DNA of 39,663 nt from Auanema rhodensis (lineage: Eukaryota; Animalia; Nematoda). The DNA lies in NCBI GenBank assembly GCA_964057225.1, contig CAXKVF010000052.1:1-39663 (forward strand), read 5' to 3'. Of the stretch, positions 33,457-36,522 are shown one piece after another; position 1 is the first letter of the stretch, and each line of letters starts with the position of its first letter. A program made the position numbers and the translations under genes. The notes under the pieces are model-generated. The model saw only the letters and a list, made by a program, of their open reading frames with translations, searched no databases and was not told the DNA's origin.

Positions 33457-36522
<3,066 letters not shown>

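What the first reader, a model, noticed from the sequence alone, without database searches (positions are those of the whole stretch)
36502..36522. 28S breakpoint lies on a pseudo-site of the flank's GTAAAAC-N6-GTTTTAC palindrome
Seen: 28S ends at GTGAGAC-AGGTTA-GTTTTAC-C. The flank has GTAAAAC-TGGTTG-GTTTTAC (37673-37692), GTAAACC-TGTTAG-GTTTTAC (39036-39055), GTAAAAC-TTTTAA-GTTTTAA (39230-39249) and TGTGTAAAAAC-GGTCCA-GTTTTAACACA (39608-39635, 11-6-11 with one mismatch). The spacers AGGTTA and TGGTTG share GGTT. Known: tyrosine recombinases act on inverted half-sites around a 6-8-bp spacer (dif is 11-6-11), and eukaryotic Crypton and DIRS-type elements encode them. Inference: the array edge may have formed by site-specific recombination into a conserved 28S look-alike, with the crossover in the spacer. 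Microhomology-mediated repair is the simpler alternative. No recombinase is encoded in this window.
Basis: partly seen in the sequence, partly recalled or inferred. Interest (0 to 1): 0.75.

Follow-up and report, generated by a model that had tools for sequence, protein, structure and literature searches.

The report
Recombinase-type attachment site in 28S rDNA
The "edge" of this ribosomal RNA gene array is really the left end of a 9.6-kb mobile DNA element that sits at one exact spot in the 28S gene, and the 20-base inverted-repeat motif at the break looks like the docking site of an integrase-type (tyrosine) recombinase carried by the element's larger relatives.

Summary
28S breaks after 36522, on GTGAGAC-AGGTTA-GTTTTAC, and the flank carries the same 7-6-7 motif (8 window matches against 0.39 expected).

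The "array edge" reading is wrong. The contig ends inside a 9,599-bp insertion ("A"). About 31 copies sit at this base, each with the reciprocal junction.

Two other elements use the same site: B (10,955 bp) and C (over 11.3 kb). That rules out one-off microhomology repair.

The right-hand junction carries the element's own left arm: GTAAGAC in A and GTAAAAC in B. B's version makes a perfect palindrome. Every perfect N6 site in the 181-Mb genome lies in these elements. So the 18-bp "duplication" is better read as shared att-core identity, with crossover in or beside the spacer.

B and C carry a many-exon antisense gene with tyrosine-recombinase motifs in the right order, followed by SET-domain exons. 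Statistical support is only marginal (Pfam E 0.023; hhalign E 0.059). A has lost those exons.

An 18-bp staggered cut remains a live rival.

Other agents of this scan reported the same element family on other contigs of this genome. The closest published analogue is the 28S-integrating, recombinase-bearing whispoviruses of crustaceans.

The parts
36502..36521 (+). Left junction core (attL in my reading). It has the 28S left arm GTGAGAC (36502-08), the spacer AGGTTA (36509-14) and the right arm GTTTTAC (36515-21). Identity to uninterrupted 28S ends at 36522.
   Evidence: The same junction occurs 31 times in the genome.
36523..39663 (+). The first 3,141 bp of insertion element A, which is 9,599 bp in full. 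It is cut off here by the end of the contig. This part has no ORF over 89 aa and no recombinase gene.
   Evidence: It is 99-100% identical to at least 30 other copies.
4291..4310 (+). Unoccupied target site (attB) in an intact 28S copy. The same site is at 12345-12364, 20402-20421 and 28456-28475.
37673..37692 (.). Internal perfect 7-6-7 palindrome, GTAAAAC-TGGTTG-GTTTTAC. It is present in 29 copies of element A. No perfect N6 site lies outside this element family.
36515..37679 (.). A 1.17-kb module bounded by ~45-nt imperfect inverted repeats. Each repeat starts with the 7-nt arm, followed by a CATGG box and a GGGTAT-N6-ATACCC hairpin.
   Evidence: 34 of 50 positions identical without gaps, and 0 of 2000 shuffles reach the score; family D4.
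39036..39055 (.). Degenerate 7-6-7 site with one mismatch, next to a TGTATCAAATTTGATACA palindrome inside a ~190-bp repeat unit. A sister site lies at 39230-39249.
   Evidence: (family D5).
39608..39635 (.). An 11-6-11 inverted repeat with one mismatch. Its arms are related to the 7-mer arms but are not the same.
   Evidence: read directly from the sequence. It is not among the matches with up to 2 mismatches.
38407..39250 (+). Array of ~163-194-bp repeat units that carry the GTATCAAA(A/T)TTGATAC palindrome and arm-like half-sites.
   Evidence: (families D1, D2, D5).
33458..36522 (+). The 5' portion of the interrupted 28S rRNA gene. The break lies about 625-645 bp downstream of the R1-type site and 39 nt upstream of the sarcin-ricin loop motif.

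Best explanation
The break at 36522 is the left attachment junction (attL) of a non-autonomous, 9.6-kb member of a family of DNA elements. These elements integrate at one site in 28S by conservative site-specific recombination.

The target (attB) is the conserved 28S sequence GTGAGAC-AGGTTA-GTTTTAC. It consists of two imperfectly inverted 7-bp arms around a 6-bp spacer. The element's own site (attP) has the same spacer and right arm and a better left arm: GTAAGAC in A and GTAAAAC in B. Strand exchange in or beside the spacer leaves the 28S left arm at attL and the element's left arm at attR. The ~18 bp that look like a target duplication are the identity shared by attP and attB.

The likely enzyme is a tyrosine recombinase. 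It is encoded antisense to the rRNA by a many-exon gene in the larger elements B and C, followed on the same strand by SET-domain exons. Element A has lost about 3 kb holding those exons. Its spread is therefore by help in trans and/or by unequal crossing-over within the array.

Shown: the junctions, their recurrence, three elements at one site, the arm differences, the genome-wide restriction of the motif, and the deletion in A. Inferred: the recombinase identity, the crossover position, a circular intermediate, and current activity.
For: (1) It is an insertion, not an edge. The flank recurs at least 30 times at 99-100% identity. In contig C66 the insert is 9,599 bp and 28S resumes after it. 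There are 31 left junctions (30 ending ACC|G plus one variant ending ACC|A) and 30 right junctions of type A.

(2) Different elements occupy the same site. B is 10,955 bp and present four times. C is over 11.3 kb and present twice. Their left junctions are at …ACCCT|. A and B share only 460 bp at the DNA level.

(3) Every attL has the native arm GTGAGAC, whereas attR has GTAAGAC in A (30 of 30) and GTAAAAC in B (4 of 4). All three changed bases are exactly those that complete the palindrome with GTTTTAC.

(4) Perfect GTAAAAC-N6-GTTTTAC sites occur only in these elements: A internal (spacer TGGTTG), C internal (spacer AGGTGC) and B's attR. Each internal spacer matches AGGTTA at 4 of 6 positions. 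None of the 12 sites on the large contigs has N6.

(5) B and C share at least 16 colinear conserved exon blocks on the antisense strand. Among them are ENGQR(N/P)EV, then SIRNSAxNTYA…MAH, then an exon with Q(T/I)Y.

(6) The only database relatives are P0001 and P0002. Both carry HxxR…H-x8-Y.

(7) For P0001 the top Pfam hit is Phage_integrase, E 0.023, over profile positions 71-165. Its nearest language-model clusters are PF00589 clusters, score 0.93, 13 of 30 hits.

(8) hhalign against six genuine recombinases gives one alignment, E 0.059, that puts H, R, H and Y on XerD H244, R247, H270 and Y279. The box I exon places its Arg on XerD R148. Best hits to Cre and lambda Int also land on H289/R292 and on H333/Y342.

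(9) A SET domain is present (PF00856, E 7.6e-5, above the curated cut-off).

(10) In A the zinc-finger-like exons run straight into the SET exons, so about 3 kb of C is missing.

(11) Precedent: whispoviruses with multi-exon tyrosine recombinases integrate into crustacean 28S at a motif resembling CCGTCGTGAGAC, which directly abuts this spacer (PMC10871703).
Against: No sequence test of the recombinase reaches significance. Pfam, PHROGs, NCBIfam and PDB-HMMER find nothing on single exons. The PF00589 six-frame scan of the genome hits 31 ORFs on the chromosomes but none on these elements. The structure model of P0001 was unusable (pLDDT 42).

B and C lack the His of HxxR; they have Met and Arg there.

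The perfectly repeated stretch is 18 bp in both A and B, shifted by 2 nt. A fixed 18-bp staggered cut would also give that.

No attP or circle junction is present in the assembly.

The right junction of C was not found.

The 3' ends of A and B look homologous, so their arm evidence is not fully independent.

Whether the recombinase-like and SET exons form one gene is not shown.
Confidence: 0.66

Rival explanations
1. Staggered-cut insertion. An endonuclease nicks the two 28S strands 18 bp apart, and fill-in creates a true 18-bp target-site duplication. The endonuclease could be that of an rDNA-specific non-LTR retrotransposon acting in trans, or some other site-specific nuclease. On this view A, B and C are passengers or decayed elements.
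For: The perfect direct repeat is 18 bp in both A (AGAC…ACC) and B (AC…ACCCT), shifted by 2 nt at both ends. The site lies about 625-645 bp downstream of the R1-type site. From memory, that matches the Anopheles RT1/RT2 site, which has a 17-bp duplication; I could not open those papers. An earlier agent's note, s1-420112, says the junctions resemble those of this genome's R4-type elements; I did not test that.
Against: There is no reverse transcriptase, endonuclease ORF or poly(A), and no 5'-truncated copies. The elements carry intron-containing genes. The bases just outside the 18-bp repeat at the right junction (GTA in A, GTAAA in B) match the palindromic arm 3 of 3 and 5 of 5, but match 28S only 2 of 3 and 3 of 5. 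The same 20-bp palindrome type recurs inside A and C and nowhere else in the genome, which a staggered cut does not explain.
Confidence: 0.18
2. One-off capture of foreign DNA at a 28S break by microhomology-mediated or end-joining repair, later amplified by unequal crossing-over.
For: A copies are 99-100% identical and often sit in adjacent units about 17.67 kb apart. Array amplification would produce that pattern.
Against: Three different elements lie at the same site with junctions within 2 nt of each other. Two of them share a colinear, conserved gene set. The element-type arm is present at the right junction.
Confidence: 0.07
3. A true array boundary, or an assembly chimera at 36522.
For: In this window nothing follows the flank, because the contig ends at 39663.
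Against: The window is the entire contig C55. At least 30 other contig positions show the same flank continuing to 9,599 bp and back into 28S.
Confidence: 0.02

Closest known systems
28S-rDNA-integrating whispoviruses of decapod crustaceans (PajaWSV and PotrWSV; PMC10871703)
   Same: They integrate site-specifically into 28S. The flanking short direct repeat (CCGTCGCGRGAC) resembles the CCGTCGTGAGAC that directly abuts this spacer. They carry multi-exon tyrosine-recombinase genes; the related telomere-specific recombinases in that paper have zinc-binding and SAM-like N-terminal parts.
   Different: Those are giant endogenous viruses of several hundred kb with viral core genes. These are 10-11-kb elements (19-23 kb according to others' notes) in a probable nematode. 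The repeat here is shifted to the right and built as 7-6-7. SET-domain exons follow the recombinase-like exons. I did not test homology between the two sets of recombinases.
Prokaryotic integrase systems (lambda Int attP/attB, XerCD/dif, Cre/lox, integrative elements in tRNA genes)
   Same: The core site consists of inverted arms around a 6-8-bp overlap. After integration the element is flanked by direct repeats that are shared core identity rather than a duplication, with element-specific bases in one arm. The target lies in a conserved RNA gene.
   Different: This is a eukaryotic host and the gene has many introns. No accessory-site architecture or excisionase was identified. The catalytic motif set is incomplete in B and C, which have no His in HxxR.
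Cryptons (eukaryotic tyrosine-recombinase DNA transposons)
   Same: They are DNA elements thought to move through a circular intermediate using a tyrosine recombinase, with no long terminal inverted repeats and no true target duplication.
   Different: To my knowledge Cryptons are not specific for a single rDNA site. The Pfam integrase model detects the genome's 31 chromosomal recombinase ORFs but not this gene, so it belongs to a different, much more divergent lineage.
R-elements, i.e. rDNA-specific non-LTR retrotransposons (R1, R2, R4; RT1/RT2 of Anopheles)
   Same: They occupy one exact site in a minority of 28S genes, and distinct families share the same position. The site is about 630 bp downstream of R1, which is where I remember RT1/RT2 to be. 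The flanking repeat is short, 14-18 bp.
   Different: There is no reverse transcriptase, endonuclease, poly(A) or 5' truncation here. The genes contain introns and run antisense to the rRNA. The junction has a palindromic core.

Membership tests
Tyrosine-recombinase (integrase-type) site-specific integrating element | The core site is made of two inverted recombinase-binding arms around a 6-8-bp overlap region. | tested here: met
   The 28S site is 7-6-7 with 5 of 7 arm positions complementary. B's right junction and the internal sites of A and C are perfect 7-6-7.
Tyrosine-recombinase (integrase-type) site-specific integrating element | The flanking direct repeats are shared attP/attB identity, with element-derived bases in one arm, rather than a duplication made on insertion. 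| tested here: inconclusive
   The right-junction left arm is GTAAGAC (30 of 30 in A) or GTAAAAC (4 of 4 in B), against the native GTGAGAC at every left junction. All changes complete the palindrome. However, the perfect repeat is 18 bp in both, which also fits a fixed stagger.
Tyrosine-recombinase (integrase-type) site-specific integrating element | The element encodes a protein with the catalytic signature R…K…HxxR…H/W…Y and the integrase fold. | tested here: inconclusive
   The motifs are in the right order and register. Pfam PF00589 is the top hit on relative P0001 but below its cut-off (E 0.023). hhalign gives E 0.059 and the language-model neighbours are PF00589 clusters. Single exons give no family hit. 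The His of HxxR is replaced in B and C. The fold model failed.
Tyrosine-recombinase (integrase-type) site-specific integrating element | A circular or excised form with an attP junction exists, and precise excision restores attB. | tested here: not met
   No attP-type junction is present in the assembly. Reads were not available, so this is weak negative evidence.
Tyrosine-recombinase (integrase-type) site-specific integrating element | The copy in this window is autonomous. | tested here: not met
   A has no ORF over 122 aa and no domain hit. It lacks about 3 kb holding the recombinase-like exons that C carries.
rDNA-specific non-LTR retrotransposon (R-element) | It has an ORF encoding reverse transcriptase plus an endonuclease. 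| tested here: not met
   A and B have no long ORFs. Pfam finds nothing on the 20 longest or best-conserved open segments I scanned, apart from SET. I did not scan every short segment.
rDNA-specific non-LTR retrotransposon (R-element) | It has a 3' poly(A) or defined 3' tail, frequent 5' truncation, and variable 5' junctions. | tested here: not met
   The 3' ends are …T8-GTAAG in A and …TTTTCA-GTAAA in B. All copies are full length with identical junctions.
Crypton | It has a recognisable Crypton or Phage_integrase-type recombinase as its mobility gene and no strict target site. | tested here: not met
   PF00589 detects 31 chromosomal ORFs but not this gene. All 37 insertions found are at one 28S site.
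28S-integrating whispovirus-type endogenous virus | It has nimaviral core genes and a genome of hundreds of kb. | not tested
   The elements here are about 10-11 kb. I made no search for viral core genes.

The most novel reading that the evidence does not exclude
The elements are more than simple integrating units. Modules inside them are bounded by the same core-type sites: the 1.17-kb segment at 36515-37679 has inverted arm-plus-hairpin ends, and the ~190-bp repeat units carry degenerate 7-6-7 sites. These modules could be cassettes that the same recombinase inverts, excises or captures. That would amount to an integron-like or invertible cassette system living in an animal's rDNA, together with a compact eukaryotic integrase whose 20-bp target is conserved in the 28S of essentially all eukaryotes.
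Probability: 0.12. Interest if true: 0.85.

Novelty: new variant of a known kind. Interest (0 to 1): 0.62.

Why it matters
All well-known rDNA-specific parasites of animals are retrotransposons, apart from the piggyBac element Pokey. A small DNA element that enters one 20-bp site of 28S by integrase-type recombination would be a second, mechanistically different solution to the same niche. So far that has been reported only for giant crustacean viruses.

This window adds the site anatomy:
- the unoccupied attB, four times;
- an attL;
- the element's own perfect core-type sites;
- the arm differences that separate shared-core identity from a target duplication.

These make the mechanism directly testable with defined attP and attB substrates. 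Because the target sequence is nearly universal in eukaryotic 28S, a working recombinase with this specificity would also interest those looking for rDNA safe-harbour integration tools, alongside R2.

Tried and rejected
Steps that failed or led nowhere:
- The whole-window Rfam scan failed; a partial scan worked.
- The apparent alternative junctions with T after ACC (C71:5465 and C8:11442649) are only 1-bp CCC-to-CC differences in otherwise continuous 28S or pseudo-28S.
- My first view, that N6 was not enriched because the 29 sites are copies of one site, was revised. After collapsing copies, the three independent perfect N6 sites are all in the element family, and there are none elsewhere.
- Pfam on 10 open segments of A gave nothing.
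- Pfam, PHROGs and NCBIfam on the B and C exons gave only SET.
- PDB sequence searches with the exon profiles found nothing relevant.
- The AlphaFold model of P0001 came out at pLDDT 42, so I did no fold search.
- The language-model search on a single C exon was uninformative.
- The word-index protein search found no relatives beyond P0001 and P0002.
- The Anopheles RT1/RT2 papers are not held, so that comparison rests on memory.
- A literature search for the target sequence gave nothing relevant.
- The searches for C's right junction were blank.

All protein searches were exon by exon or on database proteins.

Full report
WHAT IS IN THE WINDOW

The window is a whole 39,663-bp contig (C55) of a 181-Mb eukaryotic assembly in 112 contigs. 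It holds about four and a half rDNA units of roughly 8,054 bp. The 18S is 1,747 nt and the 28S about 3.5 kb. That fits the nematode origin that other agents of this scan report; I did not test the taxon further.

The fifth 28S copy is identical to the other four up to 36522 (…GTTTTACC) and then diverges.

NOT AN ARRAY EDGE

- The first 1 kb of the flank occurs at least 30 more times at 99-100% identity on many small rDNA contigs, often about 17.67 kb apart. That spacing equals one rDNA unit plus a 9.6-kb insert.
- In contig C66 the insert is 9,599 bp. After it, 28S resumes at GTAAGAC-AGGTTA-GTTTTACC-CTACTG.
- Exact-pattern scans find 31 left junctions of this element (30 ending ACC|G and one variant ending ACC|A) and 30 right junctions.
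- So the contig simply stops 3,141 bp into the element, which I call A.
- The break lies about 625-645 bp downstream of the R1-type site and 39 nt upstream of the sarcin-ricin loop motif.

OTHER ELEMENTS AT THE SAME SITE

- Element B is 10,955 bp. It has three copies on C42 and one on C20, all identical. Its junctions are …GTTTTACCCT|TAGTTG… and …TTTTCA-GTAAAAC-AGGTTA-GTTTTACCCTACTG.
- Element C is on C31 and C14, and more than 11.3 kb of it was read. Its left junction is …ACCCT|GTATCC….
- A and B share only 460 bp at the DNA level (93% identity). C is a mosaic, partly 96-98% identical to A.
- Three different elements within 2 nt of each other rule out a one-off repair event.

THE MOTIF IS REAL

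- In the window, GTAAAAC-N6-GTTTTAC with up to 2 mismatches matches 8 times against 0.39 expected. The matches are the 28S site five times plus 37673, 39036 and 39230.
- In the genome, 47 perfect sites exist with spacers of 0-20. The 12 on the large contigs have spacers of 1-19 and none of 6.
- Every perfect N6 site lies in these elements: A internal (spacer TGGTTG, 29 copies), C internal (AGGTGC) and B's right junction (AGGTTA, 4 copies).
- Within the elements, sites with up to 2 mismatches are most frequent at N6, tied with N7 in A: 3 N6 sites in A against 0.07 expected, and 4 in C against 0.15.
- The half-site 7-mer is about tenfold enriched in the window flank (7 seen, 0.68 expected). It is not enriched in B.
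- Two of the flank sites belong to paralogous ~190-bp repeats.
- The first ~45 nt of A, starting with the right arm, form an inverted repeat of the DNA that ends with the left arm of the internal site: 34 of 50 positions identical, and 0 of 2000 shuffles reach the score.

DUPLICATION OR SHARED CORE?

Every left junction keeps the native 28S arm GTGAGAC. Every right junction has GTAAGAC (A, 30 of 30) or GTAAAAC (B, 4 of 4). The three changed bases are exactly the ones that make the left arm the reverse complement of GTTTTAC, so B's right junction is a perfect 7-6-7 palindrome.

Suppose the repeat were a true 18-bp duplication. Then GTA (A) and GTAAA (B) would be element ends that match the palindromic arm 3 of 3 and 5 of 5 by chance, while matching 28S only 2 of 3 and 3 of 5. 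Taken together with the element-internal perfect sites, this favours the att-core reading:
- attB is GTGAGAC-AGGTTA-GTTTTAC.
- attP carries the better left arm.
- Exchange occurs to the right of the arm differences, that is, in or beside the spacer.

Two points weigh against this. The perfect repeat is 18 bp in both A and B, which a fixed stagger would also give. And the 3' ends of A and B look homologous (…ATATT-GAAAATTT-CA…GTAA), so they are not fully independent witnesses. No attP-type junction exists in the assembly.

THE CANDIDATE ENZYME

A has no ORF over 122 aa and no domain hit. tblastx shows protein-level conservation on the strand antisense to the rRNA. B and C share at least 16 colinear exon blocks, in this order:
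- a CPICxKxDSNxxRHLV zinc-finger-like exon;
- a block resembling a core-binding domain;
- ENGQR(N/P)EV followed by a GT splice donor;
- SIRNSAxNTYA…MAH;
- an exon starting Q(T/I)Y(I/L)TDGR;
- SET-domain exons (Pfam PF00856, E 7.6e-5, above the curated cut-off).

I built no joined exon model. The exon boundaries and the H-x8-Y spacing in B and C are therefore inferred from splice signals.

A profile of the box II exon, searched against 1.84 billion proteins, found only two relatives, P0001 and P0002. Both are spliced fragments with canonical HxxR…H-x8-Y. The tests on them gave the following:
- P0001's top Pfam hit is Phage_integrase, but below the cut-off: E 0.023, 14.9 bits against 27.1, over profile positions 71-165 of 172.
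- Its nearest language-model clusters are PF00589 clusters, score 0.93, 13 of 30 hits.
- hhalign against an alignment of XerD, XerC, FimB, FimE, lambda Int and Cre gives E 0.059. A single 47-column alignment places H, R, H and Y on XerD H244, R247, H270 and Y279.
- The box I exon puts its Arg on XerD R148, E 0.32.
- Single comparisons with Cre and lambda Int also land on H289/R292 and on H333/Y342.

Each statistic is marginal on its own. The consistent register and order are what persuade me.

Points against: exon-level scans of four libraries were blank. The genome-wide PF00589 scan hits 31 chromosomal ORFs but not these elements. The fold model failed. B and C have Met or Arg in place of the first His.

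A is a deletion derivative. Its zinc-finger-like exons match C at 96-98% and run straight into the SET exons, so about 3 kb of C is missing.

COMPARISON WITH WHAT IS KNOWN

The nearest published case is the 28S-integrating whispoviruses of decapods. They have multi-exon tyrosine recombinases and a flanking repeat, CCGTCGCGRGAC, that resembles the CCGTCGTGAGAC directly abutting this spacer (PMC10871703). I found no paper describing such an element in nematodes. The position also matches what I remember of the Anopheles RT1/RT2 retrotransposon site; those papers were not readable here.

Other agents of this scan reported the same element family on other contigs of this genome. Their recombinase claim was a lead, which I then tested as described above. 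One of them could not confirm it. Another judged the 7-6-7 site indistinguishable from a staggered cut. The arm-difference and genome-wide motif arguments presented here bear on exactly that question.

LIMITS

As a result I could not examine C's right junction, the larger relatives, or the context of P0001 and P0002.

VERDICT

- Observation: confirmed.
- Interpretation: right about the kind of site and the likely mechanism, wrong about the array edge.
- Probabilities: recombinase-type integration about 0.66; staggered-cut insertion about 0.18; other explanations make up the rest.

Noticed in passing
L011:7437-10000 (element A positions 6421-9022; not in the window): Element A contains a 281-bp tandem array of 9.3 copies at 97% match, with an 84-bp sub-repeat. 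Each unit carries one GTTTTAC half-site.
   Followed up: partly
A 5860-6319 (L011:6876-7335) and B 7072-7530 (L029:2723-3181): A 460-bp block is 93% identical between A and B, although the two are otherwise unalignable. It overlaps an antisense ORF of 139 aa in B that has a diverged paralogue near B's 3' end at B 9715-9917. The cause could be recent exchange or strong constraint; the function is unknown.
   Followed up: partly
G000:C8:10.97-11.46 Mb (L023, L024, L027): Degenerate rDNA units, 86-95% identical to the active unit and partly inverted, lie inside a chromosome-scale contig. Next to one of them is a fragment of element A (positions 512-1177, 86% identity).
   Followed up: partly
G000 contigs C8 and C13 versus C11 and C14: There are two rDNA unit lengths, about 8,055 bp and about 8,394 bp, on different contigs. 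An array starts 6.5 kb from the end of the 26.9-Mb contig C8.
   Followed up: no
G000 large contigs C1, C3, C4, C5, C6 and C8: There are 31 open frames of 147-438 aa that pass the Pfam Phage_integrase cut-off, probably DIRS- or Crypton-type elements. None lies in the rDNA contigs.
   Followed up: no
G000:C10:29843 (L025, minus strand): This is a variant copy of A. Its first ~35 nt differ but keep the GGGTA…TACCC hairpin, and its interior is rearranged. The left and right junction positions are the same as in A.
   Followed up: partly
window 36532-36551, 36996-37015, 37142-37161, 37288-37307, 37641-37660: Five copies of a GGGTAT-N6-ATACCC hairpin motif lie in the first 1.2 kb of element A, three of them spaced 146 bp apart (family D4).
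   Followed up: partly
window rDNA spacer, e.g. 22282-22732: The spacer holds internal repeats that are about 84% identical at a 31-bp offset.
   Followed up: no
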